Positions 1-64,000 of a stretch of 64,000 bases of DNA are shown here, in pieces (the first letter of the stretch is position 1; every line of letters begins with the position of its first letter). The stretch spans positions 1-64,000 of IMG/VR virus record IMGVR_UViG_3300032236_001859, one strand, 5' to 3'. The notes beneath the pieces were generated by a model. That model ran no database searches. It saw only the letters and a program-made list of their open reading frames with translations, and was not told the DNA's origin. The translations under genes were made by a program, and so were the position numbers.

Positions 1-180
1 CAGTCTGGTGGTCTTGCTGCCCATGGCTTTGACTGCAGCGGGGACATCAATGATGGCCTTGACGGCGTTACCAACGGCACGTGAGCTGCGCTCAGAGTTG
101 CGGTCGTAGTGACGCACGATCTCGGGGAGGCGTGCGAGGATGATCTCCTCGACGATTTCGGTGTGATTGCTAATTGGCAT
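1..180 (-). CDS. hypothetical protein, runs off the window edge (MPISNHTEIVEEIILARLPEIVRHYD...)
   Basis: Hand-translated, not in ORF track; ATG at 180 preceded by AAAGGA; no stop before position 1. Confidence 0.6.
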   Translation of the reverse strand, partial: MPISNHTEIVEEIILARLPEIVRHYDRNSERSSRAVGNAVKAIIDVPAAVKAMGSKTTRL

Positions 181-40011: not shown

Positions 40012-40027
40012 TTTACTCACAGTCAAG
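40012..40027 (-). promoter_or_regulatory. conserved promoter/operator motif, copy 4
   Basis: TTTACTC-AC-AGTCAAG; minus strand TTGACT-N15-TACGTT. Confidence 0.7.
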
Positions 40028-43000
40028 CCGCACCGAGCAGCGAGACGACTTCAGCCTTGGGGAGTTTGACCCCCCAACGCGTGAAGATTTCAATGTCGAC
40101 TCCGAGGTTCTTATCTGTCCCCGGAATCTTACATGCAGTACCCATGCAGAACTTGATGACCTTCACCATCTGGGGTACTGATGGGATTGGAACCTGGAAC
40201 AAGAAGGCATCATGGATTGGCAAGATGATGCTGAACCCAAGGGCCTTCCCGATATCCGTTCTATACCGGAATCGGTATAGGTTGATTCCTGCCAGACTGA
40301 GGAGAAAGGCCACAGATCCCTGAATGGGACTATTCGAGGCCTGGCGACGCGCCGCGGCCTGCTGTGACTTCGAGAGCTGACGCACACCAGTGAAGTACCG
40401 GCGACGACGGGCGCAGTCTTCTACCCATCCGTTCTCGATCGCTGAATCCATGTTCGCCTGCATCCAGGCCCACGCCACGGAGAACCGTTTTGCGAACCCG
40501 TTGATAAGCCCCTGTGTTTCATCTTGTGTAATAGAAACACCTGCCTTACCGATCTCACGTGTTAAAGCACGTGCTCCTCTTCCGTATAAGATTCCAAAAT
40601 TCACTGTTTTGCTTGCATCTCGAAAATCCTTATAGGATTTCTTGAACTTGTCACACCACTTGTCATACGGGCACCCCTTGGTGACCACACCACCATCTAA
40701 TACAGTAATCGCAGCCTCCATCTCAGCGAGCAGGGGTAGCTTGAAAGCCACACATGCCATTTCTGAGTGGAGGTCACGCCCCTGCTGCACAATCGCGGTG
40801 AGCACGGGATCCCCGGAGGCATACGCTAACTGGGCGAGCTCCGCGGTCTGAAAGTCGGCCTCGATGAGGACATAACCTTCAGGGGCTATAAGACAGGACT
40901 TATAGCTCGGGATATTGAGACGCTTGTCAGGCGGGATCCAGGAACCATCAGTAGGCTTCTTGTCGTCATCCGTCCTACGTTTATATTCCTTGACATCGCA
41001 GCCAAAGAAGTAATCCACGAACACCGCGAAGGCTTCAGACTCCTGACGTTTCGGAGATGTCTGGAGGTTCGGCTTCGATGACCGGTATCGATGGGTTTCC
41101 GAGGTCTGCCAAAGATGGGTTCTTACACGCCCATCCCGGTAGATGTTGTTATGGATCCCTTTGCCATCACAGGGTACCCCGAACTCATTGAGCTCCACGG
41201 CGTGGAGATAGTCCCGCAAGAACTTCCCAAGGATGAGAACCTGCTGGAGATATTTAATCTCGTCGCAGGGGTACTTGAGAGCCAGGAGGTCCAGGGATTC
41301 CGACTTCGTTGATGGCGTATGCCTATCCGCGACGCCGGCGAGCATGATCTCTTCCCAATCCCGTGGATACTTATCTGTATTCGAGATCGGGGTCATCCCA
41401 TGGAGAACCCTGGCACCCGGGGGGACCACGTGTGGCTTCTTGTCCCTGAAAACGCAGTCGCTGAACAAGAGCATGAGGACCTGATCCTTAGACCCCGGAT
41501 TAAACGAGGGCCAGTTCAGGAGTTCTCGGAGCTTGGCAAGGATGGCATCATAGACGGGTTGGTAGATCCCTCTGAGCTCAGTGCGCTGGACCTCATCGAC
41601 AAGGATACCCTGTCGTTCGACATCGAGGAGATGAAGTGAGGTCGGCGCCGTAATGTTCTTGTAGATCTCGAACAAGTGAGCGTTCTCTGGTTTCGCGAAC
41701 AAGTCGAGGAGGCAGTGTAGGGCCTCCCAGGTCACCGCGACGTCATCCATGCTATATGGAATCAGGATTTCATCGGGGATGTTGCGGTAACCAAAGTCGA
41801 GGTTGGACTCCCTGCCATTCTCAGTCAACCAGTCCTCCAGTGGCTTCCAGTAGTTCCCGAACTGGGGGGCAAACTTGCGAGTCAGGACTTCCAGGCCTTG
41901 GTCATCATCCCCGAAGAGGAGATGGTGCATCAGCATGGTATCGTAACCTGTCTCGAGTTTGTCGTCGACGTTGATCTCCATCTCGGAGAGCCGCTGGATA
42001 TCAACGCGGAGGTGGTGACCAGCAAGACGCACCTTGGGGTGCTCGAACAGGGCACGCATGGAATCCACGGCCTTCGCGATCTCGGCATCTGTCATGAAGG
42101 CGTGGCCCTGGCAACCATAGAAGCCGAAGTAAGCGGCTTCACCTCGATTCCAGGCGATCTGGACACTGAGCGTGTAGACCTCCTCCTCCCGGGCTACATC
42201 GTTTCCGAACTCGGTATCGAAAACGACGACTTCGACTTCACCGGATTCCACCTTGGCGATGACCTCTTTGCAGGTCGCCTCGATTTCCCACGGTGATGTG
42301 CAGACCCTGTACTTGGAGCGATCGACCTGGACCTGACTGACCCCGTTAAAGATCAGGAAGTCACGCGCACGCTCCAGGTAACTCCGGAAGACATCCAGTG
42401 AGGCATGCCCATAGGCGAACTGGTTGTGGCTGGGAACCACGAGAACCGTGGTACCATGCCAGTCGTGGAACTGGCCCTCATAGTTGTCCATCTTGGCATT
42501 TCTACCAAACAACCCCTTGAGAGCCTCTGATCCACTCGCAATGATCAACCTGGGGTTGAGCCCCAGGATGTCAGCCCTGAACAAGGCCGCATTCGACTTC
42601 TTGTGGGCCTCGCGATACGAGGTCATGCCTTCGCCCAGTGGGAACCGAATCGATGCGGTCAGGAAGATGTCCTTGAGGTTGAGACCTGAACCCGCGATCT
42701 CGTTTCTCAACCAGAGCCCGACGTCATCGCTGAGGTGGCTCTGGATGCTGAGATCCTCCCGGGTCGCCGGAGGTGTGATGTAAACAATGGGGACCCCCTT
42801 TCGCCACTCGTAAACCGGGGGGTTGTCGAGGATGCACCCAGGGAGATGTACGGGTTGCCCTGGGAACTTTACCTCGGGCAGCGTGATGATGCTGTTGCAG
42901 ATGTACTGGGCGGCCTGCTCCTCGGAGAGCTCGGGGCGAATCGCCCGTACTGCGATGAGGTGCATGGGATCCAGATCGATGACATCGGCGACAGCGGAGC

Positions 43001-43100
43001 GTGCAGTGGCCGCTTTGTGCGTGGCCACGATCTCGGAGACCATCCCCTCTAACCGGAGCTGCATGCCTTCTTCTGAATACGTGTTATCCAAGGTGTGCAC
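40023..43100 (-). CDS. polA: family A DNA polymerase with N-terminal UDG-like and 3'-5' exonuclease domains
   Basis: Exo FDTEF; RYRSSKPNLQ; motif A EADFQTAE; motif B RDASKTVNFGILYG; NSPIQGS; motif C PIHDAF; UDG-like NPRLIIASGSEAL. Confidence 0.95.
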   Translation of the reverse strand: MHTLDNTYSEEGMQLRLEGMVSEIVATHKAATARSAVADVIDLDPMHLIAVRAIRPELSEEQAAQYICNSIITLPEVKFPGQPVHLPGCILDNPPVYEWRKGVPIVYITPPATREDLSIQSHLSDDVGLWLRNEIAGSGLNLKDIFLTASIRFPLGEGMTSYREAHKKSNAALFRADILGLNPRLIIASGSEALKGLFGRNAKMDNYEGQFHDWHGTTVLVVPSHNQFAYGHASLDVFRSYLERARDFLIFNGVSQVQVDRSKYRVCTSPWEIEATCKEVIAKVESGEVEVVVFDTEFGNDVAREEEVYTLSVQIAWNRGEAAYFGFYGCQGHAFMTDAEIAKAVDSMRALFEHPKVRLAGHHLRVDIQRLSEMEINVDDKLETGYDTMLMHHLLFGDDDQGLEVLTRKFAPQFGNYWKPLEDWLTENGRESNLDFGYRNIPDEILIPYSMDDVAVTWEALHCLLDLFAKPENAHLFEIYKNITAPTSLHLLDVERQGILVDEVQRTELRGIYQPVYDAILAKLRELLNWPSFNPGSKDQVLMLLFSDCVFRDKKPHVVPPGARVLHGMTPISNTDKYPRDWEEIMLAGVADRHTPSTKSESLDLLALKYPCDEIKYLQQVLILGKFLRDYLHAVELNEFGVPCDGKGIHNNIYRDGRVRTHLWQTSETHRYRSSKPNLQTSPKRQESEAFAVFVDYFFGCDVKEYKRRTDDDKKPTDGSWIPPDKRLNIPSYKSCLIAPEGYVLIEADFQTAELAQLAYASGDPVLTAIVQQGRDLHSEMACVAFKLPLLAEMEAAITVLDGGVVTKGCPYDKWCDKFKKSYKDFRDASKTVNFGILYGRGARALTREIGKAGVSITQDETQGLINGFAKRFSVAWAWMQANMDSAIENGWVEDCARRRRYFTGVRQLSKSQQAAARRQASNSPIQGSVAFLLSLAGINLYRFRYRTDIGKALGFSIILPIHDAFLFQVPIPSVPQMVKVIKFCMGTACKIPGTDKNLGVDIEIFTRWGVKLPKAEVVSLLGAA

Positions 43101-45770: not shown

Positions 45771-46360
45771 TTGAACACCTCACCTAGCTCTACAAAGAGC
45801 TTCTGAGCGGTGGATGAGGCAAGGAACTCGCGTCGAGCCTCCTCACGGCACGCCTCGGCGATGCCTGGTAGGTGATAATGCGTGGACATGACAAACCTCA
45901 TCAGGGGTGTGAACTCAAACCAAACTGTCCGCAGGATACCCTCGGGGGAGCCAATGCTGACATACCTTTTCCAGCGGTCAAGCTGTAATTGGTAACGATG
46001 TAGGTCAATATCGGCTGTACTAATCAAGACATCCCGTGCCCCTGTGGTCACGGTTTCAGATGCCAAGCCCTGAGGGTATAATTGGGCACCTGTCTTGAGG
46101 AGATACCCGATCTGGGTGTTCACGAAGACCCCAGGGGATTCCCCGAGACGCCTCGCGATCTCCGCTGCCTTGATGAAATACCTGCGTTGCTGCTTCGAGC
46201 ACCCCGTGGATTCGGGGACCACTGCTCTCCTGGCTTCAACGAAGGCGCGCTCGATGGCAGTGGCACCCCGATCGATTTCAGGGCTTACCTGGGGTTCCGA
46301 GGCAGGCTCAAAACCAGTCTCGACGCTGGAGACTTTCTTTCTCTTGTAGCCAGTTTTCAT
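45767..46360 (-). CDS. hypothetical protein between the two helicases (197 aa)
   Basis: ATGA overlaps at both ends. Confidence 0.75.
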   Translation of the reverse strand: MKTGYKRKKVSSVETGFEPASEPQVSPEIDRGATAIERAFVEARRAVVPESTGCSKQQRRYFIKAAEIARRLGESPGVFVNTQIGYLLKTGAQLYPQGLASETVTTGARDVLISTADIDLHRYQLQLDRWKRYVSIGSPEGILRTVWFEFTPLMRFVMSTHYHLPGIAEACREEARREFLASSTAQKLFVELGEVFK

Positions 46361-47811
46361 GAGCCCACCTCGTAGATCCAGCCATTCCGCTTGTAGACCT
46401 TGAAGCGATTCGCTGACCGCGCCTTCATATCCGTGCTGAAGACATCGTTGAAATCGATGAGGAGTCCATACTCCTTTTTGCCATCGTGGCCCTTACGACT
46501 CAGACGCCCGGGGACCTGACCACTCGCGATCTCAGTTGAGGTGCCCTCGGCGCGGACGAGGACATCGAGGCCCAAGAAGTTGACCCCCTTGGACCACTTA
46601 TACGTCGCGATGACTTTGCGGAGGGTTCCCGCTGAGAACTCTTTCTTCATCCGAGCACAGTCGTCTTTGGATGGCGCCGACTGCGTGCTCTGCATGGACC
46701 CCACTCGACGCAGCTGAGCCTCCTTGTCGTCGTCGAGTTCACCGGTGACGACAACAAACTCTGGGAGGACCTGCTGAAGCAGGAAGGCGTGTTCAGTTTT
46801 CTCCACCATGATCAGGATCTGGGGATCCGGGGCTTCAGTGATCTCAGCACGCCTCACCGCATGCGCAATCAAATCATTGCGCGCCTTATTACGCCAGACC
46901 GCGACACGATCCTTGGCGACCTTGTTGGTCATCCCGGTGACATCGGGTCCAATCTTACTCTCGTAGACCCGATACCTGAGTTGGCAGATGTTCCCGGACT
47001 CCACGGCCTCCTGATAGGGGACATGGTGGATCACGGGTCCAAACAAGGCCTCCATGAACCCATCGGCACCATCACTGCGTCCCTTGGGGGTAGCCGTGAA
47101 TGCCTGGAACTTGGCGCGGGGGAACCGGTTGAACATGTCGATGAAGTTCGGGGTAAGCACGGCATGACATTCATCGGTCATCAGCAAGTTGATATTGGGG
47201 TCCAACTTTAACAACGAGTGTGTAACCGCTACGGTTACCCTGCGCTGCTTGTGCTTACCGCCACCCACGATGCCCACTGAATACCCGAGATCGGGTACCA
47301 AGGCCTCATATATTTCTTTGGCGACATCCGTACTCGGAACAGTGATCCCAATCAGGGAATTGGGATATGCCCGCACTATCATGCGCATGATAAAGCTCTT
47401 GCCCCATCCGGTTGGACAACTAATTACGCCACAACGATTTGCGAGGAGCTTGCAGACCACCTCGGCCTGGGATCCCCGCCAAGAGATCCCCTGAAGTCTG
47501 GTGAGTTCTGGATCCGGGAGCCCGCACGGGGTAAAATCCCTGACCTCGACTTCATGGCCCTGCTTGGTGAGTTCAGCATGGATCCGGTACCCGTAACCCG
47601 AGTAGGTCACGAATACCGGGGCTCCATCGGGTTGGGTGTCATACCAGAACAAGGTGTGGTTTTCAGATAGCCTGACTTGCTTCCACCCCGTTTCCGCAGT
47701 GGGCTGTAACTGAATCATTCGGGTGACAACACAAGCCTGCTCGAACTGTTTTCCAAGAGGCGCCGGGCTCAGGGAGACCATGCGCCCCAGATATGTCAGC
47801 ACTGCTTTCAT
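46357..47811 (-). CDS. SF2 DExH helicase (UvsW-like)
   Basis: CPTGWGKS, TDECH, FTATP, QVPGRLSR. Confidence 0.9.
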   Translation of the reverse strand: MKAVLTYLGRMVSLSPAPLGKQFEQACVVTRMIQLQPTAETGWKQVRLSENHTLFWYDTQPDGAPVFVTYSGYGYRIHAELTKQGHEVEVRDFTPCGLPDPELTRLQGISWRGSQAEVVCKLLANRCGVISCPTGWGKSFIMRMIVRAYPNSLIGITVPSTDVAKEIYEALVPDLGYSVGIVGGGKHKQRRVTVAVTHSLLKLDPNINLLMTDECHAVLTPNFIDMFNRFPRAKFQAFTATPKGRSDGADGFMEALFGPVIHHVPYQEAVESGNICQLRYRVYESKIGPDVTGMTNKVAKDRVAVWRNKARNDLIAHAVRRAEITEAPDPQILIMVEKTEHAFLLQQVLPEFVVVTGELDDDKEAQLRRVGSMQSTQSAPSKDDCARMKKEFSAGTLRKVIATYKWSKGVNFLGLDVLVRAEGTSTEIASGQVPGRLSRKGHDGKKEYGLLIDFNDVFSTDMKARSANRFKVYKRNGWIYEVGS

Positions 47812-47835: not shown

Positions 47836-50244
47836 TCAGGAGGCCAACGCGGCATTGTTTCCAATGGTTACGGTTTGATCAAAGAATCCCATGAGAGAGG
47901 CCTCATGGGTGACCACGATGACCTGTCGATGACTCGCCGCTGAAACCTTCTTGAGCTCGAGCAGCACGGTTTGCAGATTGTGGATATTGGTTTTGTCGAG
48001 GTAGCTGCTGGGTTCGTCGAGAACGATGAGCCCCGCATTCCTGGCAAAGGTATCCGACATCGCAACCCGGAAGCTCGAGGATCCCACGATTTGTTCGCCA
48101 CCACTGAGACGGGCGGCGTCCATTTCGGCTTCGGCACCGTTTTCATCTGGCTTCAGAGCACGGAACTCCATGTTCTCATTGATCCAGAGGCGGAATGGGG
48201 CATTCCACTTATCGAGATACCACCCCAACTGGTTATTGATGATCGCGGCATACTCCCGCATGGCCACTGCTGGCAAATTGGTGGGATGCAGGATATCACG
48301 GACCTTGTTGACAGTTTCCACCCAGGCTTGATCCCGGGCTTCACGACGCGCGGTCTCCGCGAGACGGTTGGCCTCGCTTTGACGCATGGTCACCGAGGCA
48401 ACATTGGCGGCATGGGTGGCCTCGATCTGGGCCTGCGACTTCCGGAGCTCGGCGAGTCGTCTGGTATCCGCTACAGCGGCATCGACTTCCTGGGGGCTCG
48501 GGGCATCGAGCTGCCTTCCCAAGGCGATCACCGCGGATTCCGCGGAGGCCACCTCGTTATCAGCTGAAGTCAACTTGACCACGGCGGCATCCCGGGTGCG
48601 CTGGAGTCCCACATGGGCATCCAGGGCAGCCCTGATCTGGGCGAGTTCACGATCAATGGTTTCGATCTCACCTGGAGCCGGTGTGGCCACCCCACCCAGG
48701 GATTCCAGGAGTTGCTTACTGGACTGGAGTCCGGCGAGGGCCTGCTGGCGCTGGTATGCCGCATTCCGCTTCGCCGTGAGATCCGCAGATGCCGCATTTG
48801 CCTTCGCCGTCGCCGCCTTGAGATGGTTACTAAAGAACTCGGCGGCCTGGACTGCGATCGCATGAACTCTCGCAGCGGCGGTCTGCACGTCACCCATGCA
48901 CCGGTTGATCTCTTCTCCCTTGGCGAACTCGAGTTCGGATCGGCGCTTCTCCCGCTGTATGGTGAGTTCAGTGATCGAGGCACGAATCGCGGCGATGTGC
49001 GCGGGGCCCCCTTTGACCTCCTGTTTGCAGGTCGGACAGAACCCGGTCTCGAAACCCTGGATATCACCGGTGCGCCGGTTGATCTCCGCTGACCACGCGA
49101 CGAGATCGGCATCGGTGAGAACATTCCGGGCCTTGGCTTCGTCGAGGGCTCGTGTCGCGGCTTCCTGGGCTGCCTTGGCTTCGATCTCCGCTGGGATCAA
49201 GGCACGGTTGCCCCGTGCCGCGTTCTCCGCAGTGGCGAGTTCAGCGGCCGCCGTGGCCGCAGCGGCCTCCGCGGCCTGGCCTTCCTCTGCGGTGACCTCA
49301 GGGTTCATGAGCAGAGTGGCTTGATAAGACGCCACTGCAGCAGCCGCGTTCTGGCGTTGGTTGACCTGGGAAAGCGCGACTTCGATCTGAGCCCGACGAT
49401 TCCGCATCGAGTCCGCTTTTTCAGTGAGCCCCTGGACAACCCTGGCCTCCAGGGCTGCTGTCGCCGTGGCGAGCTCGGAACGCGCCGTGGCCTGGGCCTG
49501 GAGTGCGGTTTGATGCCGATCCGTGGCCTGCGCCAAAGCGGCGCCATGGCGTTGCGCGGCATCTGCACGTCTCAGGACATCCTCAGCTGGTAACAGGGCC
49601 TCAATGGCTGCCTTGCCGGCTGCACAGGCCTCCTGGGAGACCAAGACCTCCGCTCTTGCCGCGGTGAGCAACTGAGCGGAATCCTTGAGGGCCTGGGAGA
49701 GCCCTGGGGTCAACGTGTACTTCGCGGCTTCCTCGCCGAGATAGCGATGGGCATCGGCGACACCCTGGAGACCGAAGACGCGTTGGAACTCCTTGAGGCG
49801 ATCCCCGGGGCGCTGGAATAGCACGGCGTTGATGGCCCCCTGGGGGACCAAGACTGCATCGAGGAGAACCTTGGCAGTGGATCCCGTGAGTGCGTTGAGC
49901 GTGCTCTGGACCTCAGCAGCCTTGATGATCTTCTGCTCACCCCCCGTGTTGTCCTTCCAGGACATCTCGACCTTCGCCGAGGTAATCCACCGCTTCAGGT
50001 AGTAATCGGTATCCCCGAAACGGATGGTACCCTCAACCCAGCCGGTCTTTGCACCCCAGCGGAGATTGTCTTCCTTCTTGCCGGGGTTGTTGGATTCCCC
50101 GGTGAGCAGGAATCGGATGGCGTCAAGGAAGTTGGACTTCCCGCGACCATTGGATCCAATGATTCCATTGAGGCCGGCGCCGAGTTCAACGGTGACATCC
50201 TCGTGCTGGCAGTAATTTCGCAGTGTTACAGTTTTTATGAACAC
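47836..50244 (-). CDS. sbcC: SbcC/Rad50-like SMC ATPase
   Basis: GTG start with AAAGGAG; GSNGRGKS, Q-loop VPQG, Zn hook CPTCKQ, signature LSGGE, LDEPS, VVTH. Confidence 0.93.
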   Translation of the reverse strand: MFIKTVTLRNYCQHEDVTVELGAGLNGIIGSNGRGKSNFLDAIRFLLTGESNNPGKKEDNLRWGAKTGWVEGTIRFGDTDYYLKRWITSAKVEMSWKDNTGGEQKIIKAAEVQSTLNALTGSTAKVLLDAVLVPQGAINAVLFQRPGDRLKEFQRVFGLQGVADAHRYLGEEAAKYTLTPGLSQALKDSAQLLTAARAEVLVSQEACAAGKAAIEALLPAEDVLRRADAAQRHGAALAQATDRHQTALQAQATARSELATATAALEARVVQGLTEKADSMRNRRAQIEVALSQVNQRQNAAAAVASYQATLLMNPEVTAEEGQAAEAAAATAAAELATAENAARGNRALIPAEIEAKAAQEAATRALDEAKARNVLTDADLVAWSAEINRRTGDIQGFETGFCPTCKQEVKGGPAHIAAIRASITELTIQREKRRSELEFAKGEEINRCMGDVQTAAARVHAIAVQAAEFFSNHLKAATAKANAASADLTAKRNAAYQRQQALAGLQSSKQLLESLGGVATPAPGEIETIDRELAQIRAALDAHVGLQRTRDAAVVKLTSADNEVASAESAVIALGRQLDAPSPQEVDAAVADTRRLAELRKSQAQIEATHAANVASVTMRQSEANRLAETARREARDQAWVETVNKVRDILHPTNLPAVAMREYAAIINNQLGWYLDKWNAPFRLWINENMEFRALKPDENGAEAEMDAARLSGGEQIVGSSSFRVAMSDTFARNAGLIVLDEPSSYLDKTNIHNLQTVLLELKKVSAASHRQVIVVTHEASLMGFFDQTVTIGNNAALAS

Positions 50245-50269
50245 GTGGACTCCTTTGCTGTGATTGTGA

Positions 50270-50524
50270 TTACCATTCAATGGCAGCGCATAATGCGGCG
50301 AAGCCATGCTCGGGACGTACCCCCGAGAGCTCCTCGACATCTGCGAAGATCCGACGGGCGAGGTCTTTGTTGACCTGGCTGCCCTTGTCACCAGAGATCG
50401 CCCAGTGATCGTCGAGGCCGACAATGGCGACCTTCGGGATCGACTTGTCCTCATAGCCATTGATGAAGACGTAGATCTTCTGGGACTTCGGGGATCTCCA
50501 CTTATTCAGGCGTAGGCGTGACAT
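50270..50524 (-). CDS. hypothetical protein (84 aa)
   Basis: GGAGAG RBS; tiling. Confidence 0.7.
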   Translation of the reverse strand: MSRLRLNKWRSPKSQKIYVFINGYEDKSIPKVAIVGLDDHWAISGDKGSQVNKDLARRIFADVEELSGVRPEHGFAALCAAIEW

Positions 50525-58173: not shown

Positions 58174-58863
58174 TCACTTTTTCTGAGACGCCTTCTTGTA
58201 CTTCTCCGTGAAGGCCTCTGACTTCAACTCGGTGCCTGTCTTGGCGCCTTTGCTGCGCAGGAACTTGACGATGCCAGAGGGATCCGTGTCGTCTTCCTTG
58301 CAGCACTTATGGAAGTTACTCTCACCCCGCATCGCGAAGTCGAGTGCGGTGGCCCCTACGCGATCCACCTGATTGATGACTGCACCTTTCTCGACCATGT
58401 GCTTGATCATGTCGAGTTGGTAGGGGCGACCAGCGGCCTGCATGAAAGGGGTGACCCCAAATGAGTCCGCTGTCTTCCAGCCCACGGGGTCTATGGCCTC
58501 GCACGCCTTGAAGACGGACACGTGTGCGTACTGGGCTACATGCAGCCACCCATTACAAGCCCACTTCCCCGCATATCTGGGATCCGGAGTCGGCACGCTC
58601 TCCCGGACATCCAAAATGGGCACCGTCGCCGAGAGCGCCTTGGGGTCCGTGGCCAAGAGATCCAGTAAGGCTTGGGCGTCTCGGTTGTAGATACACAGCA
58701 TCGCTGGGGAAACATCCACCCAGGTTCGTGGGCGTTCCGCGAAATACTGCTCGCGAGTTTTTGATGGGCGATAGACATCCTGGGGCTTCCATTCATAGGA
58801 GTAGGTCGCCGCGTTGACCCCTAGCCCGAGGAGGGCGAGGAAAACAAGAATTGATTTAATCAT
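58174..58863 (-). CDS. secreted ankyrin-repeat protein
   Basis: Signal peptide MIKSILVFLALLGLGVNA; DSFGVTPFMQAA...MVEKGAVINQVDRVGATALDFA; IVKFLRSKGA. Confidence 0.85.
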   Translation of the reverse strand: MIKSILVFLALLGLGVNAATYSYEWKPQDVYRPSKTREQYFAERPRTWVDVSPAMLCIYNRDAQALLDLLATDPKALSATVPILDVRESVPTPDPRYAGKWACNGWLHVAQYAHVSVFKACEAIDPVGWKTADSFGVTPFMQAAGRPYQLDMIKHMVEKGAVINQVDRVGATALDFAMRGESNFHKCCKEDDTDPSGIVKFLRSKGAKTGTELKSEAFTEKYKKASQKK

Positions 58864-58891: not shown

Positions 58892-59767
58892 TTAGGACGG
58901 GGTTTCTTCATAAGGCAAGGCATCGGCGCCACCATGGCCATTCTTGCACGTGAAGCCCGAGGGAGTCCAGAACTGGGGTTCCCGACACTGGCAACACAGG
59001 GCAAGACGGATTTGAGAACGGTCACTTACTGGAATCGCGTATCCATAGTCATCGAGAACCTCTGCCTTCGCGGAAACACGAGAGCGTTCGTCTTGATCAC
59101 AATGAAAGAATCTCATCGCGGGGGCAGCACCATGTGCAACCGCATAACAAAGTCTTCCAAGCATGGGACTGGGTCTCACCGCGTAGACCCGGGACAACAA
59201 GGGCACCCCGTAGATCTCACCAACACTGGGGGGTGCCACGGGGGTGCAGACGCGTTGGGCACCCCTGGTGACGACGACACCCCATTCGATGTGGCTGGCA
59301 AGACTACGGAGCAGGGAGTTCACGGCTTCAGTAAGTGAGACAGCGGCGCCACCAAATAATGCGTGGCTCCGCGACATCGGATCGTTTACCTTGTTGTCCA
59401 CCGTGAGCTGCCATTGATTACCTCGGGTGTCATAGGTGATCTCGACACGGCAGTCACCTTCGATGCCTGAGACCGCCTCCATGATCCGGTCGATCTCGGA
59501 GTCACCATAGGGCACCCCCAAAACAGGGGCCTGGGACCTCGCCATTTTCGATTCTAGCTCGTTTGAGGCCTCGGAGAGGGAATCCCCCCACTTCAGGAAA
59601 TCGACGTCGGGGACGCCTAGGATCGCGGCGGCGAGGGCTTCGAGGGTGATCAGGGAGTCGACTTGCAGCCGCGCCGGAGCTGCGGCGAGATCGAGGACAC
59701 TCCGGGGGAGATGAAACGTGGTCCCATTGGGGAGTCTGAAGTAAGCGAAACGAGAGTCTTCGTTCAT
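58892..59767 (-). CDS. hypothetical protein with C-terminal Zn-ribbon-like motif
   Basis: CCQCREPQ...TCKNGH; ATGA overlap. Confidence 0.75.
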   Translation of the reverse strand: MNEDSRFAYFRLPNGTTFHLPRSVLDLAAAPARLQVDSLITLEALAAAILGVPDVDFLKWGDSLSEASNELESKMARSQAPVLGVPYGDSEIDRIMEAVSGIEGDCRVEITYDTRGNQWQLTVDNKVNDPMSRSHALFGGAAVSLTEAVNSLLRSLASHIEWGVVVTRGAQRVCTPVAPPSVGEIYGVPLLSRVYAVRPSPMLGRLCYAVAHGAAPAMRFFHCDQDERSRVSAKAEVLDDYGYAIPVSDRSQIRLALCCQCREPQFWTPSGFTCKNGHGGADALPYEETPS

Positions 59768-60084
59768 CGGGGGACCTCGGCTTCACAGCGTACGGGGGTG
59801 GATGCACTGGGGGAGACCTGAACAAACCCGTATTGGAAGGCTCGCAACCATTCCTGGCCGGTCTTGGTGTCCCGTAGGAGATACACTGGGTTGGGGTAAC
59901 TGAAGCCTGATGGGGTCACCTGTGTTTCTACGAAACGAGTGTACTCCACGGGAACCGGGGCCTCTTTAGATTTTGGTTTTGATGACGCTGCCCCGTGTAT
60001 CGCCGTGATAAGCAGCACACCAAGAACAGCGGCAATCGCAATTAAGATCAAGATCTCGATAAGGGTGAATGCGGATGATTTCAT
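59764..60084 (-). CDS. prepilin-type N-terminal cleavage/methylation domain protein
   Basis: MKSSA|FTLIEILILIAIAAVLGVLL with conserved F1 and E5; AGGAGG RBS; ATGA overlap with sbcD stop. Confidence 0.8.
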   Translation of the reverse strand: MKSSAFTLIEILILIAIAAVLGVLLITAIHGAASSKPKSKEAPVPVEYTRFVETQVTPSGFSYPNPVYLLRDTKTGQEWLRAFQYGFVQVSPSASTPVRCEAEVPR

Positions 60085-61211
60085 TGGACCTCCTGGAGGA
60101 AGCGTTGGCGTGCGGATTCAATCTTGGCGACGATGCCTTCCTTGCCTTGGGTGCCATCGAGGAGATCGAGGGCGAGACCATGGGCGCGGGGGTCATCTTC
60201 GGGCTTCAAGAATCCAGACACGAAGGTGGTGATCTCGGGGACGCCTTCGGCGGCCACACTGGGATCAAAGGTGATCGCGGCCTTCTGGGATCCCGTGAAC
60301 TTGGGGACCACGAAGACATCTGACTTCGCGGCCTTGATGGTGTCCGCGAGGATCTCCGGCGCCGAGACAATTGAGTTGTCATAGGTGACGTAGATGACAC
60401 CAGGCAGCTTGGTCTCTTCTTGGTTGGCATCGGCGTGGGCAATGAACTCCCGAATCGAGGTCATCAGACCTTCGATGTTATCTGCGGTCACCGCGAACTG
60501 GCAGATCGAACGGGAGCGAATCGGGGCGCGTTCAAAGACGCCACCGGGATGCCGGAGCAACACAGACTTGGGATGCCTGGCCTCATTGATAGACCTCGTG
60601 GTCATCGCACCGGTGTAACCAGCCCAGCGAGTCCCGGATCGTGGACCTCCCCAGGGCTCATGAATATCGGACATCACGATGTCGCCGGCTAACTCGGGTA
60701 CCCAGTCGAGATCCAGGCTCCAACAACCCTCGATATCCAGGTACTGCTTACACGCCTGGTGCATGACGATGACATCGCTGGGGACCCCATTGGAACCCAC
60801 CTCGGCGAGCTTGGCGGCGAGGTCATCTCGTGAGGTGTAATCGAAGGCGCGTACTGCGGTACCCGCGATCTCTCTGAGATGACCATCACCGATCCAGTGG
60901 GCATCACCGGAGACCGCTTGGCCCCAGGACAACACCCGCTTGTCATGATTACCCTGGATGAAGGAGACAGAGGTGCCCTGTTCACTGGCACGCTCCACGA
61001 AGTCTCTGAACTTGTAGACCAAGGCGGGATGAGGATCCGGAGAATCAAAGATATCACCGGGTAGTATGAGGTCCCGGATATCCCGAGACTTGCATACCTT
61101 TAGGATCTCGGAGAGTCCGAGATCACTGTCACCTGTGATCTCTCTTCGAGACTCCCAGATCGTGAACGAGAGGTGTAAATCGCCAATAAAAGCGATGGTA
61201 GAAGGCTTCAT
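60081..61211 (-). CDS. sbcD: SbcD/Mre11-like metallophosphoesterase nuclease
   Basis: GDLHL, PGDIFD, QGNHD, MHQ, SDIH, YTGA; AAGGAG RBS. Confidence 0.9.
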   Translation of the reverse strand: MKPSTIAFIGDLHLSFTIWESRREITGDSDLGLSEILKVCKSRDIRDLILPGDIFDSPDPHPALVYKFRDFVERASEQGTSVSFIQGNHDKRVLSWGQAVSGDAHWIGDGHLREIAGTAVRAFDYTSRDDLAAKLAEVGSNGVPSDVIVMHQACKQYLDIEGCWSLDLDWVPELAGDIVMSDIHEPWGGPRSGTRWAGYTGAMTTRSINEARHPKSVLLRHPGGVFERAPIRSRSICQFAVTADNIEGLMTSIREFIAHADANQEETKLPGVIYVTYDNSIVSAPEILADTIKAAKSDVFVVPKFTGSQKAAITFDPSVAAEGVPEITTFVSGFLKPEDDPRAHGLALDLLDGTQGKEGIVAKIESARQRFLQEVQ

Positions 61212-61243
61212 TATGGAACTCCTTGTCTAGTAGATGGTTAAAC

Positions 61244-61486
61244 TGAAAAGCATCACATATGGTCCTTTAATATATCTAACTTCCAACAGCCAACAGCCCA
61301 CCAACCGTGGCGCCGACACCACCGGAGGTGGCGATGGTGACGACCAAGATCAGTGAAATTCACACGTCGAGGATTTCGACATCACGGCCTCCACCGGTGG
61401 TGGCGCCACGCGCAGCGGGCGCGGATGTCTGGCTGTTGGCTATCTGGAGGTTAGATATATTAAAGGACCGTATGTGATGCTTTTCA
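61244..61486. repeat. 243-bp compound inverted repeat
   Basis: Outer arms ~55 bp (TGAAAAGCATCACATA[T/C]GGTCCTTTAATATATCTAAC...AGCCAACAGCC) with few differences; inner degenerate arms CGTGGCGCC..ACCACCGG; two small hairpins in the centre. Confidence 0.9.
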
Positions 61487-61510
61487 AGTCTTGAGAACAT
61501 TTTGTTCACC

Positions 61511-62422
61511 TTAGTGAACAACTGGGGCCTCAGGAGATTTGACCCCTCCGGTGTCTAAGATTTCAACACTTTGGGATTTCTTCTCCTTCATCGAGAGCGC
61601 GTAGAACTGCTTCCCTAGATGTACTTTTTTAGGGATTACTGGGAGAGCGGCGTGGTGCATGAAGTCACTGATTACCTTCACCGGGGACATCACATGCTCC
61701 CTCCACTCCGTTAGCATCTCGGCATCCTTACAGGGGGTATCGAAGATAAAGCCGTAGTTCCCGATTGGAGTCGGGACTACCCCGGACTCCGAACACATCA
61801 CTGGGATCGACTTGTATCTACCCCCTCCAGAATCAGAGAAGATACCACGGTACCTGAACCCAAGGTTGGTGAGTTCATCGTAGGTCACAGGAGCCGAGTA
61901 GCCCTCCTCCAATTGGGTGATCTCCAGTGACCACACCAAAGGGGTGAGGCTACGGACATAGCGCGCCCGGAATGCCTCCCAGGCCTTATCGGCATCCCTG
62001 GAGTCAAACTCGCGCAATGGAAACGTGCTGGACTCCCGGTAGATCCACCGCGGAGGCGCCGGGGTCTTGGTGAGGGTGTCACGGATGACGAGTTCCCTTT
62101 TGAGCCAGCACGACGGACACAGGGGGTGGCGACAGTACCCTTCGGTGTCGGCATCATGGATGATGTGGATACCTCTACAATGCTTTTTGGTGACGTCGCC
62201 GAAGGCACGGGCATTGAAGGCTTGCTGCATGGCGCAGAACCCGCGTAGGAACTCACGGGTGAGGTTTTCGTGGTGGTTACCAATCATGTCCACGGCGAGG
62301 TCATAATAAACCCCTAGAGGATCCTCTAGGGGTAGACAGTCATTCTCGGGGTTGTTCTTCTCGGAGCTCCGCTCACCCTTTTGGTGCTTGCGGGCCCCCC
62401 AGGTTGGTGGTGGCGGTTTCAT
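61511..62422 (-). CDS. Rep_1 (rolling-circle initiator)-like protein, apparently lacking HUH histidines; start uncertain (62422 or 62551)
   Basis: YCRHPLCPSCWLKR resembles the Rep_1 Zn motif; WEAF...SLEIT followed by GFRYRGIF where H-x-H is expected. Confidence 0.5.
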   Translation of the reverse strand: MKPPPPTWGARKHQKGERSSEKNNPENDCLPLEDPLGVYYDLAVDMIGNHHENLTREFLRGFCAMQQAFNARAFGDVTKKHCRGIHIIHDADTEGYCRHPLCPSCWLKRELVIRDTLTKTPAPPRWIYRESSTFPLREFDSRDADKAWEAFRARYVRSLTPLVWSLEITQLEEGYSAPVTYDELTNLGFRYRGIFSDSGGGRYKSIPVMCSESGVVPTPIGNYGFIFDTPCKDAEMLTEWREHVMSPVKVISDFMHHAALPVIPKKVHLGKQFYALSMKEKKSQSVEILDTGGVKSPEAPVVH

Positions 62423-62631
62423 CGAGCCGTCCTTTGGGGTCCAGGCGACAGACCATGTTTGGGGTCCGGATGCGATCCGTGGACGCCACAGTGGGATCTG
62501 AGAGCGGGGACCGATATCTCGGGGTGGGATAGGCGCGGTGGAGTACCGCACGAGGACTCTGTGATAAGTACATGGAAACAGTCTACAGCGTTGAGACTTT
62601 TGGGCCAGCTATGAAGTTTTCGTAGCACTGC

Positions 62632-63126
62632 CTATGCGGAGATGAAAAGGCCTGTGCGACGATGAAAAGTACCCCCTTTGGCTAGATGAGCCTTAATGCT
62701 GCGGCGAGTCATCGTCTCCTGTGCAAGAGACCACAGACCTCTATCTGGGTGGTAAACAAAGGCAACGCCTGCTTGGATATCCCTCCAGATCTCCTCGACA
62801 TCTGTGACGAGAATGTTGACCTCTGGTCTGGGGAGATCAGGGCGTGGAATCGCAGTGGGTTCGTTGATCCCATTTTTGCGATCGACAAGATGACCATTGG
62901 CATGCAGGCCTTCGGCGATTTCGCGTGCGCGCTCTTCGAGGACCTCGATGGCCACAGCGGTGAATGCAATTCGGAGCCCTGCGGCATTGGCGAGCTCCCC
63001 CAGCTTCTTGATGTAGGCCTCAAATGAGAAGCGTAATGCGTCGACGTCACAGCGGCGGTCGAGTTCGGCACGCAAGAGGTCCCCTGGGTACTTGGCGAGT
63101 TCATGCGGAATTGGTCTGTCAGACAT
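62632..63126 (-). CDS. hypothetical protein (164 aa)
   Basis: AAAGGAG RBS; AT-rich upstream. Confidence 0.75.
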   Translation of the reverse strand: MSDRPIPHELAKYPGDLLRAELDRRCDVDALRFSFEAYIKKLGELANAAGLRIAFTAVAIEVLEERAREIAEGLHANGHLVDRKNGINEPTAIPRPDLPRPEVNILVTDVEEIWRDIQAGVAFVYHPDRGLWSLAQETMTRRSIKAHLAKGGTFHRRTGLFISA

Positions 63127-63206: not shown

Positions 63207-63341
63207 CTAACCCCTCCAGATGTGGCCACGGAAGCCAGTAAATGCCCAGCCGATGAATACCACGGCCAGGAAAATAAGGGCTAACTTGATTAGGATCTGT
63301 GCGAGTGCGACGAGCACGAGCACTTTGATGATAGTCGCCAT
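63207..63341 (-). CDS. small membrane protein (44 aa)
   Basis: MATIIKVLVLVALAQILIKLALIFLAVVFIGWAF; AAGGA upstream. Confidence 0.65.
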   Translation of the reverse strand: MATIIKVLVLVALAQILIKLALIFLAVVFIGWAFTGFRGHIWRG

Positions 63342-63403
63342 ACGAGGTCCTTGCGGTGCAGGGCACCCAGGAGGTGAGGGCTCTGGCATCACTGCCATGC
63401 CGG

Positions 63404-63418
63404 ATTACCATGAGTCAA
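63404..63418 (-). promoter_or_regulatory. variant of the conserved motif at the strand-divergence point
   Basis: ATTACCA-T-GAGTCAA; minus strand TTGACT points into the leftward gene block. Confidence 0.35.
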
Positions 63419-63420
63419 CC

Positions 63421-64000
63421 ATGGTAGAACTTGCATCCAAGGAAAACGTGAGTCTCGGGGGCGACGCCGCCCTACCGAGTTACAACGATGCCCTCGGACG
63501 TCTTAGCAAGGCAAGGCAAGCCAATCCTAATATGCCCTTGTCGGCTGCCTTGCCTCTGATTTTCAAATTGAAAGGGAAACCATACTCGATAGCGAATACC
63601 CATTTCCTGTTCGAGCACGAGTATGCCACCCACAACATCCCCCGCCGGCAAATCGATAAGGCGGGGCGTCAGCTCTCGAAGTCGACGAACAAGGCCGCTG
63701 GTGGGATCATCCGTGCGGCGAGTCACCCCTATTACAACATGCTCTCGGTGACCCCGCTGTTCGAGCAGATCCGAAAGTTCTCCAACAACTATGTCCGCCC
63801 ATTCCTCAAAGAGTCCATTGTACGTGCACGTCTAATGGATGAGAGCAGGGACCAACAGGTCCTGCAGCGCACTCTCGGTAACGGTAGCAATCTGTTCTAC
63901 AATTACGCAACAAACTCAGCGGATCGTATCCGGGGCACGTCCTGCGATGAGGTCGCTGTGGATGAGCTCCAGGACTTTGACATCGATGTTTTGCCAGTTA
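63421..64000 (+). CDS. terminase large subunit (GpA-like ATPase domain), partial
   Basis: Hand-translated, open to window end: KAGRQLSKST (Walker A region), VTPLFEQIRKFS, ADRIRGTSCDEVAVDELQD (Walker B). Confidence 0.85.
   Translation, partial: MVELASKENVSLGGDAALPSYNDALGRLSKARQANPNMPLSAALPLIFKLKGKPYSIANTHFLFEHEYATHNIPRRQIDKAGRQLSKSTNKAAGGIIRAASHPYYNMLSVTPLFEQIRKFSNNYVRPFLKESIVRARLMDESRDQQVLQRTLGNGSNLFYNYATNSADRIRGTSCDEVAVDELQDFDIDVLPV

What the first reader, a model, noticed from the sequence alone, without database searches (positions are those of the whole stretch)
61244..62551. 243-bp compound inverted repeat beside a catalytically degenerate Rep_1-like gene near the genome divergence point
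Seen: the largest non-coding gap is one long hairpin with near-identical ~55-bp outer arms, degenerate inner arms and two mini-hairpins in the centre (GTGAA-A-TTCAC; GTCGA-GGATT-TCGAC). Both clean substitutions in the outer arm form U-G pairs on the plus strand, antisense to the flanking genes; only two sites, so weak evidence. Each arm reads outward as ...TTAGATATATTAAAGGACC..., the left copy pointing into sbcD and the right copy towards the terminase 2 kb away. The neighbouring ORF has the Rep_1 CxxxLCPxC and LEIT motifs but no HUH histidines. Inference, alternatives: replication origin bound by a repurposed Rep; twin divergent promoters; packaging site for the GpA-type terminase; or a structured antisense RNA.
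Basis: partly seen in the sequence, partly recalled or inferred. Interest (0 to 1): 0.72.

Follow-up and report, generated by a model that had tools for sequence, protein, structure and literature searches.

The report
Phage palindrome beside dead Rep-like gene
A 243-base hairpin-forming DNA palindrome sits just after a gene for a zinc-finger protein that looks like a rolling-circle replication initiator without its cutting residues; the pair recurs in related uncultivated giant phages and is most likely a protein-bound DNA site such as a replication origin.

Summary
Window 61244-61486 is a 243-bp compound palindrome (DNA fold -89 kcal/mol, z = -15). It is the largest inverted repeat in a 216-kb circular, phage-like genome and fills the largest non-coding gap of the window. 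It occurs in five independent assemblies, so it is not an assembly artefact. In relatives whose outer arms have diverged by about 33%, complementarity is kept by two-sided compensatory changes. The two strands fold equally well, so the antisense-RNA clue does not hold.

Distant homologues of the upstream gene (28-37% identity) carry unrelated palindromes or iteron arrays at the same place, directly 3' of the gene, even where the downstream gene differs. The site is therefore tied to that gene.

The protein fails every Rep_1 membership threshold and has no conserved HUH histidines or catalytic tyrosine. It does share the Cys knuckle, a colinear motif order (hhalign P = 0.022) and weak fold and embedding matches to Rep_1 and IS91.

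Best reading (about 0.4): a hairpin- or cruciform-forming cis site bound by a repurposed, catalytically dead Rep-like protein, probably the replication origin at the head of the sbcD...sbcC-helicase-PolA module. Rivals are a terminator or processing hairpin, an SbcCD break site, a packaging site, or a relic. Function is inferred, not shown.

The parts
61244..61285 (.). Outer left arm of the palindrome (42 nt). It contains a 13/14 A+T stretch and the outward-reading 19-mer at 61261-61279.
   Evidence: (I1), and (among the 11 most AT-rich 14-mers of the 216-kb genome).
61445..61486 (.). Outer right arm (42 nt), 95% complementary to the left arm, with the 19-mer at 61451-61469.
   Evidence: Compensatory changes in relatives are shown.
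61286..61444 (.). G+C-rich centre. It holds CAACAGC repeats, degenerate inner arms with CCACCGG(A/T)GGTGG sub-palindromes, and an asymmetric core.
   Evidence: I2, I3, D2, D3. It is 86-89% identical in relatives whose adjacent ORF is 71-72% identical.
61366..61380 (.). Central mini-hairpin GTCGA-GGATT-TCGAC. The stem is invariant and the loop varies in relatives.
61353..61363 (.). Central mini-hairpin GTGAA-A-TTCAC. Only the GTG/CAC pairs are kept in relatives, so support is weak.
61511..62422 (-). Zinc-knuckle, degenerate Rep_1-like protein (303 aa from Met44; the maximal ORF runs to 62551). The stop codon lies 25 nt before the palindrome.
60081..61211 (-). SbcD/Mre11-like metallophosphoesterase, the first gene after the palindrome.
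   Evidence: Metallophos, 5.6e-8; SbcD-like PHROG.
47836..50460 (-). SbcC/Rad50-like ATPase, part of the downstream replication-recombination module. A helicase lies at 46357-47811 and a family A DNA polymerase at 40023-43100.
63220..64000 (+). GpA-type large terminase, which continues to 65265 of the genome. It is divergently transcribed and marks the strand-switch point.

Best explanation
The palindrome is a cis-acting DNA site that works together with the gene immediately upstream of it. That gene encodes a zinc-knuckle protein that probably descends from Rep_1/IS91-type HUH rolling-circle initiators. It has lost the metal-binding histidines and the catalytic tyrosine, so it can recognise DNA but not nick it. 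The proposed mechanism has three steps, all inferred. First, supercoiling or fork passage opens the unusually A+T-rich stretches in the outer arms, and the arms pair within each strand as a hairpin or cruciform. Second, the Rep-like protein binds the arms, as HUH-fold proteins typically bind hairpins and inverted repeats at their origins. Third, this marks the place where replication of the 216-kb genome starts, at the head of the sbcD...sbcC-helicase-PolA module, with strand opening or cutting supplied by other phage or host factors. What is shown: the structure, its conservation, its compensatory evolution, and its linkage to the gene. What is inferred: binding, hairpin formation in vivo, and origin function.
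For: 1. The palindrome is real, extreme (z = -15) and unique in the genome.
2. It is present in five independent assemblies: the window, L001, L004, L005 and L013, plus the contigs of runs X3 and X4.
3. The outer arms of L005 differ from the window at 33% of sites. Of 39 pairs, 10 changed on both sides and 8 of those remain Watson-Crick; 4.3 double changes are expected under independence. Ten to eleven covarying pairs are seen on either strand. Neither strand is preferred, which fits a DNA-level element.
4. Distant homologues of the protein carry unrelated repeats directly 3' of the gene. L002 has a 117-nt palindrome. L007 has three direct copies and one inverted copy of a 15-22-bp iteron around an AT-rich spacer. 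L008 has 43-nt arms. L010 has 62-nt arms with 10-bp tandem TACCGG units.
5. In every locus with enough sequence except L010 (where it ranks second) and L009, this repeat is the top-scoring inverted repeat of the whole 10-13-kb locus.
6. Direct iterons and 10-bp phasing suggest protein binding rather than RNA structure.
7. The downstream gene varies: L002 has no sbcD there and L008 has an extra gene, while the upstream gene is constant.
8. The ORF and the outer arms are the fastest-evolving parts (65-72% identity), while the centre (86-89%) matches sbcD coding sequence (86%). This fits co-evolution of a protein with its site.
9. Rep-like signals for the protein are as follows. Relatives give weak Rep_1 hits on the Cys knuckle. 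All named ESM-feature neighbours are Rep_1, REP_ORF2-G2P or Zn_Tnp_IS91. The top two Atlas shape hits are Rep_1 and the IS91 Y2 transposase, with TM 0.41-0.46 over 180-189 residues. An AFDB 'Replication protein' hit has probability 0.96. Weak hits fall on microvirus initiators. hhalign against a Rep_1 plasmid alignment gives a colinear knuckle, motif I and LEIT alignment with P = 0.022.
10. The site lies at the head of the replication and recombination genes.
Against: There is no direct evidence of binding, hairpin extrusion or replication initiation. Cumulative GC skew shows no inflection near 61 kb, although this is uninformative here because almost all genes lie on one strand. Rep homology is sub-threshold everywhere. 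The window protein has no Pfam or PHROG hit. The PDB, VIA and Swiss-Prot fold searches give only a generic ferredoxin-like fold (bS6, ACT; Z no more than 6.7). The model has mean pLDDT 62.9. L009, a short contig, shows no repeat after the homologue. Concerted evolution of the arms, by template switching or gene conversion, could maintain complementarity without selection for function. Phage origins bound by a dead HUH protein have no precedent that I could find.
Confidence: 0.4

Rival explanations
1. The palindrome acts at the RNA level as transcriptional punctuation. It would be a long intercistronic hairpin in the minus-strand mRNA that terminates or attenuates the first, immediate-early genes after the strand-switch point, or that is cut by RNase III as in T7 intergenic sites. 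The sbcD operon would then restart from, or be processed at, its base.
For: It lies between two same-strand genes, 25 nt after a stop codon and 32 nt before a start codon. The base of the stem is an A-run, G/C-containing stem and T-run arrangement (GAAAAGC...GCTTTTC) that is kept, with covariation to GGGGCAC...GTGCCCCTTTTC, in L005. L002's palindrome is followed by T6. This genome does use long-stem hairpin terminators elsewhere, at 68421-68446 and 68761-68827. One metatranscriptome contig covering the 5' end of sbcD stops at 61232, 12 nt short of the palindrome.
Against: Neither strand is preferred in fold energy or in wobble pairs. The terminator scan finds nothing here and Rfam has no match. 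The direct iterons of L007 and the 10-bp tandem units of L010 have no role in an RNA hairpin. In L008 the T-run and A-run are on the wrong sides for the gene strand. 243 nt with a sequence-conserved centre is far more than a terminator needs. The RNA evidence is one contig at depth 2.
Confidence: 0.2
2. The palindrome is a programmed substrate of the phage's own SbcCD nuclease. When it folds into a hairpin on the lagging strand, it is cut, and the resulting site-specific double-strand break launches recombination-dependent or rolling-circle replication, or provides an entry point for the terminase.
For: sbcD follows the palindrome directly in the window, L001, L004, L007, L010 and L013, and after one gene in L008. 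sbcC lies in the same operon. E. coli SbcCD is known to cleave a 246-bp interrupted chromosomal palindrome (PMC3315005, listed), and this one is almost the same size. The selection for arm complementarity fits.
Against: The constant neighbour is the Rep-like gene, not sbcD. L002 has a different downstream gene. sbcD may simply be the first gene of the replication module. The arrangement in L007 is mostly direct repeats and would be a poor hairpin. No read-end data exist.
Confidence: 0.1
3. The palindrome is a packaging recognition site (cos/pac-type) for the nearby GpA-type terminase, and the upstream protein acts as the site-recognition (small-terminase-like) factor.
For: The terminase gene is divergently adjacent in every long relative locus. 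Repeated binding sites in direct and inverted orientation around a bendable AT-rich segment resemble lambda cosB (established knowledge, recalled from memory).
Against: One or two genes and 1.7 kb separate the palindrome from the terminase gene. The protein has no small-terminase signal. No contig in any run ends preferentially at the site in a way that suggests termini; the X4 contigs break at 61264 and 61470, but at low depth. Known cos sites are not 243-bp hairpins.
Confidence: 0.08
4. The pair is a relic of an integrated rolling-circle or IS91-like element: a decayed Rep or transposase gene plus its origin or terminal hairpin, carried along with no present function for the phage.
For: The protein resembles Rep_1 and IS91 proteins but lacks the catalytic residues. 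L002's palindrome contains CTTGATA, the motif found upstream of rep in the Rep_1 plasmids fetched here.
Against: The ORF is intact in all relatives down to 28% identity, with invariant Cys and His ligands. Synteny is conserved across deep divergence. The arms show compensatory evolution and the centre is as conserved as coding DNA. A neutral relic would have decayed.
Confidence: 0.08

Closest known systems
Rep_1 (pC194/pUB110-type) rolling-circle initiators with their double-strand origin
   Same: Both have the N-terminal C-x4-C-P-x-C zinc knuckle followed by a basic helix. The order of motif I and the '(L/T)E(I/V)T' strand is colinear. Both have a cognate inverted-repeat DNA site next to the gene.
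   Different: The phage protein has no HUH histidines and no conserved tyrosine, and it scores below the Pfam threshold. The site lies 3' of the gene instead of upstream. The CTTGATA nick motif is absent from the window's palindrome. The replicon is a 216-kb dsDNA phage with its own family A polymerase, not a small rolling-circle plasmid.
IS91-family Y2 transposases (Zn_Tnp_IS91 + Y2_Tnp)
   Same: The predicted shape gives the second-best Atlas match (TM 0.41 over 189 residues). Both combine a zinc-binding N-terminus with an HUH-type core, and both act on hairpin-forming ends.
   Different: The catalytic tyrosines are missing. There are no transposon ends or target duplications. The position in the phage genome is fixed and syntenic.
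Initiator-adjacent origins made of iterons around an AT-rich segment (SaPI rep-ori, lambda O/ori; recalled from memory)
   Same: The site lies directly beside, here 3' of, the gene of its presumed binding protein. It has repeated binding-site-like units and AT-rich stretches. Its sequence changes together with the protein between lineages.
   Different: The whole element is one 243-bp hairpin-capable palindrome whose complementarity is maintained. The presumed initiator is a dead HUH-type protein rather than a helicase or a lambda O-type protein.
AAV inverted terminal repeat with Rep78/68, and SIRV1 ORF119 Rep at hairpin termini
   Same: Both are compound hairpins with small internal palindromes inside a long stem, recognised by an HUH-fold protein in a DNA virus. 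SIRV1 ORF119 appears among the VIA matches (Z 4.5).
   Different: Those Rep proteins are active nickases and their hairpins are genome termini. This palindrome is internal to a circular map, the protein lacks the nickase residues, and one of the two central mini-hairpins is not conserved.
246-bp interrupted palindrome cleaved by E. coli SbcCD (PMC3315005)
   Same: The size and the interrupted-palindrome architecture are almost the same, and an SbcCD-type nuclease is encoded next to it.
   Different: That palindrome is an engineered insert used as a break site. Here the palindrome is natural, imperfect (73% over its full length) and conserved, and no cleavage has been shown.

Membership tests
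Rep_1 (PF01446) replication initiators | Score above the Pfam gathering cut-off (33.2 bits) | tested here: not met
   The window protein has no hit at E <= 0.1. Relatives P0003, P0005 and P0007 score 9.9-12.8 bits, on profile positions 5-33 only.
Rep_1 (PF01446) replication initiators | N-terminal Cys knuckle C-x4-C-P-x-C followed by W/R-rich helix | tested here: met
   C97-RHPL-C102-P-S-C105-W is invariant in alignment A2. It aligns to C-KNRF-C-P-V-C-AW of pC194 Rep.
Rep_1 (PF01446) replication initiators | Colinear motif I (FLTLT strand) and (L/T)E(I/V)T strand | tested here: inconclusive
   hhalign of A2 against nine Rep_1 plasmid proteins aligns 77 columns from the knuckle through WIYRE/WLFLTLT to LEIT/TEVT, with P = 0.022. 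The result is suggestive but not decisive.
Rep_1 (PF01446) replication initiators | HUH metal-binding motif (HPHFHVL in pC194) | tested here: not met
   H155 and H157 are invariant in the Rep_1 alignment. The phage family has no conserved His-x-His. By my inference from the model's strand order, the equivalent strand reads FRYRGIF in the window protein and varies among homologues.
Rep_1 (PF01446) replication initiators | Catalytic tyrosine (E..KY..K) | tested here: not met
   E210, K213, Y214 and K217 are invariant in the Rep_1 alignment. No tyrosine is conserved in the C-terminal half of A2.
HUH endonuclease fold | Ferredoxin-like antiparallel sheet with flanking helices, matching solved or predicted HUH proteins better than other folds | tested here: inconclusive
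   The top two Atlas shape hits are Rep_1 and IS91 (TM 0.41-0.46) and AFDB gives 'Replication protein' with probability 0.96. However, PDB Foldseek finds nothing, VIA gives generic bS6/ACT matches with Z 5-6.7 and SIRV1 Rep at only Z 4.5, and Swiss-Prot gives no Rep. The model has pLDDT 62.9.
Rep_1-type double-strand origin | CTTGATA nick motif in or beside an inverted repeat next to rep | tested here: not met
   CTTGATA lies upstream of rep in L015-L020. It is absent from the palindromes of the window, L001, L004, L005 and L013 and is present only in L002/L003.
Protelomerase target (telRL) of linear hairpin-ended phages | Exact dyad symmetry at the centre and an adjacent tyrosine-recombinase-type protelomerase | tested here: not met
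   The centre (about 61344-61385) is asymmetric. The neighbouring proteins give no recombinase hit.
Intrinsic (rho-independent) terminator | Short G+C-rich stem-loop immediately followed by a U-run | tested here: inconclusive
   The consensus scan reports none at the palindrome. However, the stem base plus TTTTC is terminator-like and co-varies.
cos/pac packaging site | Genome termini or packaging-series start map to the site | not testable with these tools
   All runs holding the sequence are stored as contigs only, and no molecule-end information was returned.
Known structured RNA families (Rfam 15) | Covariance-model match | tested here: not met
   There is no match at E <= 1 on either strand of 61100-61650.

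The most novel reading that the evidence does not exclude
A division of labour that has not been described before. A catalytically dead HUH-fold protein keeps only hairpin recognition at a cruciform-forming origin, and the strand break that an active Rep would make is supplied by the phage's own SbcCD (Mre11/Rad50-type) hairpin nuclease, encoded right after the site. Cutting the extruded or lagging-strand hairpin would give a programmed, site-specific break. That break would switch the circular 216-kb genome into recombination-dependent or rolling-circle replication and feed the terminase encoded on the other side.
Probability: 0.08. Interest if true: 0.85.

Novelty: new variant of a known kind. 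Interest (0 to 1): 0.55.

Why it matters
Replication origins and initiators of uncultivated jumbo phages are almost entirely unknown. This work gives a concrete, testable candidate: a defined 243-bp site with a cognate protein that recurs in freshwater, soil and wetland phage contigs.

If the reading is right, an HUH rolling-circle initiator has been turned into a pure DNA-recognition factor in a large dsDNA phage. That would add a new route by which Rep genes are domesticated.

A naturally maintained palindrome of about 240 bp is also noteworthy for another reason. Palindromes of this size are cut by SbcCD (PMC3315005), and palindromic phage DNA can trigger Lamassu/DdmABC defence (PMC11707656). 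The site could therefore be a point of vulnerability to host defence as well as a functional element.

Tried and rejected
**Readings tested and rejected**
- Assembly artefact: rejected, because the same structure is found in five independent assemblies.
- Small protein-coding gene inside the palindrome: rejected. The ORFs and their frames are not conserved among the five relatives.
- tRNA or known RNA: no Rfam match, and no tRNA in 60-76 kb.
- Recurrent phage promoter motif: the arm motif occurs only in the two arms in 216 kb, and there is no sigma-70-like site.
- Strand-specific RNA structure: neither strand is preferred.
- MITE or transposon insertion: there is no target duplication at the flanks, and the position is fixed in lineages that have unrelated repeat sequences.
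- Protelomerase site: the centre is asymmetric and there is no recombinase.

**Uninformative or circular tests**
- GC-skew origin signal: there is no inflection, but almost all genes lie on one strand, so the test is uninformative.
- A shared half-site (GRYCCTT.RATAT) between the window, L002 and L007 matches only the palindromes in 298 kb. I derived the pattern from those same sites, so the test is circular. An unbiased arm-versus-gap alignment gives only p of about 0.02 for L007 and L008 and nothing for L010.

**Searches that found nothing or could not be run**
- The profile search of the PDB found nothing.
- The profile search of the 5.8-billion-protein set added no new relatives.
- The phage DNA collection has no match.
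- The metagenome pattern scan found nothing.
- Read-end analysis was impossible because only contigs are stored.
- I did not send a complex-prediction job. A protein-DNA job gives no verdict, and my report does not claim a protein-protein contact.
Full report
**Context**

The window is the first 64 kb of a single 216,043-bp contig, classed as a virus record with direct terminal repeats and estimated to be complete. The first 123 bases recur at the end of the contig, so the map is circular. G+C content is 57%, and almost every long ORF lies on the minus strand. The exception is a short plus-strand block that begins with a GpA-type large terminase at 63220. Reading leftward from that strand switch, the genes are:
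- an accessory ORF (62632-63126);
- the ORF of the finding (61511-62551);
- the 299-bp gap that holds the palindrome;
- an SbcD/Mre11-like phosphoesterase (60081-61211);
- further on, SbcC/Rad50 (47836-50460), a helicase (46357-47811) and a family A DNA polymerase (40023-43100).

The repeat finder gives 42-nt outer arms at 95% complementarity (61244-61285 / 61445-61486). Second-tier arms lie around 61283-61307 / 61422-41, and 30-nt inner arms are 77% complementary. As single-stranded DNA the element folds at -89 kcal/mol, 15 standard deviations below shuffled controls. A self-comparison of the whole genome shows it is the largest inverted repeat present, and the gap it fills is the largest ORF-free stretch of the window. 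The outward-reading 19-mer occurs exactly twice, once per arm. The A+T-rich 14-mers inside the arms are among the 11 most A+T-rich 14-nt windows in the genome. The arm motif occurs nowhere else in the 216 kb, so it is not a general promoter motif.

**It is not an artefact, and it evolves under constraint**

The same element, in the same place, occurs in:
- an IMG/VR contig with a 95% identical protein (L001);
- Logan contigs with 79% and 66% identical proteins (L004, L005);
- a 171-kb IMG/VR contig found through a conserved central 22-mer (L013);
- contigs from a lake-water run and a soil run.

Regional identities against L005 and L013 are 71-72% for the ORF, 65-70% for the outer arms, 86-89% for the centre and 86% for sbcD. 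The non-coding centre is therefore as conserved as a conserved gene, while the arms change as fast as the fast-evolving ORF. Yet the arms stay complementary. In L005, 33% of arm positions differ from the window, 10 of 39 pairs changed on both sides, and 8 of those remain Watson-Crick, against 4.3 double changes expected under independence. RNAalifold counts 10 covarying pairs on the minus strand and 11 on the plus strand. Consensus energies for the two strands are practically equal (-130.5 and -131.7 kcal/mol). Wobble-type mismatches do not favour the plus strand: 13 columns are wobble on the minus strand and 5-6 on the plus strand, and even this count is biased by the structure I used. Rfam has no match, and the small ORFs inside the palindrome are not conserved.

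**The site belongs to the upstream gene**

An exhaustive HMMER search found only a handful of homologues. I fetched their contigs.
- L002 (37% identity) has an unrelated 117-nt palindrome starting 19 nt after the stop codon.
- L007 (28%) has three direct copies and one inverted copy of a 15-22-bp unit, with an AT-rich spacer before the inverted copy.
- L008 (28%) has 43-nt arms.
- L010 has 62-nt arms centred on 10-bp tandem TACCGG units.

A uniform scan shows these are the best-scoring inverted repeat of each whole 10-13-kb locus, or the second best in L010. Only the very short L009 contig shows none. Gene order is otherwise conserved: a divergent terminase, 0-2 small genes, this gene, the repeats, then sbcD and later sbcC. 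However, L002 has a different downstream gene and L008 has an extra one. The invariant partner of the repeats is therefore the upstream gene. Direct iterons and helical-turn phasing indicate protein binding sites rather than an RNA hairpin.

**The protein**

Public gene calls and the extent of homology favour a start at Met44 (303 aa). Neither Pfam nor PHROGs hits the protein. The family alignment has an invariant C...H...C-x4-C-P-x-C-W pattern. Three relatives give weak Rep_1 hits restricted to that knuckle. Several further lines of evidence point the same way:
- All named neighbours in the ESM feature search are Rep_1, REP_ORF2-G2P or Zn_Tnp_IS91 clusters.
- An AlphaFold model (pLDDT 62.9, with the core well modelled) finds a Rep_1 cluster and an IS91 Y2-transposase cluster as its two best Atlas shape matches (TM 0.41-0.46).
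- The same model finds a 'Replication protein' cluster in AFDB (probability 0.96, low TM) and weak microvirus initiators in BFVD.
- I built a Rep_1 alignment from pC194 and eight plasmid homologues. Profile-profile comparison aligns 77 columns in order, from the knuckle through motif I to the LEIT/TEVT strand, with P = 0.022, and it stops just before the HUH strand.

Against this, PDB Foldseek, the Foldseek-independent PDB search and Swiss-Prot give only a generic ferredoxin-like fold. I put remote Rep_1/IS91-type ancestry at roughly 0.6. What is clear is that the HUH histidines and the tyrosine, which are invariant in the plasmid alignment, have no conserved counterpart here. If this is a Rep, it cannot nick.

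**Mechanism**

HUH-fold proteins characteristically recognise hairpins and inverted repeats at their origins (established knowledge). A dead member placed directly beside a palindrome whose complementarity is maintained, at the head of the replication-recombination module, is most simply a site-recognition protein with its site. An origin of replication is the most likely role (confidence about 0.4).

The rivals are these:
- **RNA-level terminator or processing hairpin.** In its favour are the terminator-like stem base, the long-stem terminators elsewhere in the genome, and one metatranscriptome contig that ends 12 nt before the element. Against it are the lack of strand bias, the iterons in relatives and the size of the element.
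- **Programmed SbcCD break site.** It is attractive because E. coli SbcCD cuts a 246-bp interrupted palindrome (PMC3315005). It is weakened by the variable downstream gene.
- **Packaging site.** This is untestable without raw reads.
- **Neutral relic.** This is contradicted by the conservation.

**Novelty and score**

Origins that lie beside their initiator gene and are built from repeats are a known kind. The variant here is a long palindrome maintained by covariation, paired with a catalytically dead Rep-like zinc-knuckle protein, in a clade of uncultivated jumbo phages. I found no description of this arrangement. It is a solid and testable lead, but its function rests entirely on inference, so I score interest at 0.55.

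Noticed in passing
window 1-123 and genome 215921-216043: The first 123 bases repeat exactly at the contig end, so the 216-kb map is circular. Nearly all long ORFs lie on the minus strand, apart from a short terminase block starting at 63220.
   Followed up: partly
window 62632-63126: This 164-aa ORF between the Rep-like gene and the terminase is missing from the 94%-identical relative L001. In the lake-water contig of run X3 it is replaced by 239 other bases, so it is an accessory indel at the strand-switch point.
   Followed up: partly
L012 8421-8446, 8761-8827 and 9808-9843 (genome 68421-69843): A cluster of further palindromes lies here. The 67-nt one is a 25-bp-stem hairpin flanked by A7/T7, which looks like a strong intrinsic terminator. 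The region 65-71 kb has few long ORFs.
   Followed up: partly
L002 843-849 (and L003 918-924): The palindrome after the 37%-identical homologue contains CTTGATA. The same heptamer lies upstream of rep in the Rep_1 plasmids fetched here (L015-L020). It is absent from the window-type palindromes.
   Followed up: partly
window 60988-61232: A metatranscriptome contig (run X16, depth about 2, 97% identical) covers the 5' end of sbcD and stops 12 nt before the palindrome. This could be a transcript start, a processing site or simply low coverage.
   Followed up: no
window 59764-60084 and 58174-58863: A 106-aa protein has a prepilin-type N-terminal methylation motif, and a 229-aa protein has weak ankyrin repeats. 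Both lie just downstream of sbcD and may hint at the host group.
   Followed up: no
L007 2545-5667: In this distant relative, the gene divergent from the Rep-like gene, in the position where the terminase sits in the other long loci, is 1040 aa and carries intein-splicing and LAGLIDADG domains. No terminase domain is on record for it.
   Followed up: no
L002 1443-1652: A PHD/RING-like zinc-finger ORF (PF00628, E = 3e-6) lies two genes after the homologue in a phage-like contig.
   Followed up: no
window 38484-38878; genome 116059-116507 and 144372-144964: Self-BLAST shows direct, partly tandem repeats of about 100-250 bp at 67-81% identity inside long ORFs. These may be repetitive protein domains.
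   Followed up: no
window 61500-61515: A small hairpin (GTTCAC-CTTA-GTGAAC) spans the stop codon of the Rep-like ORF, just outside the big palindrome. It is partly kept in L004.
   Followed up: no
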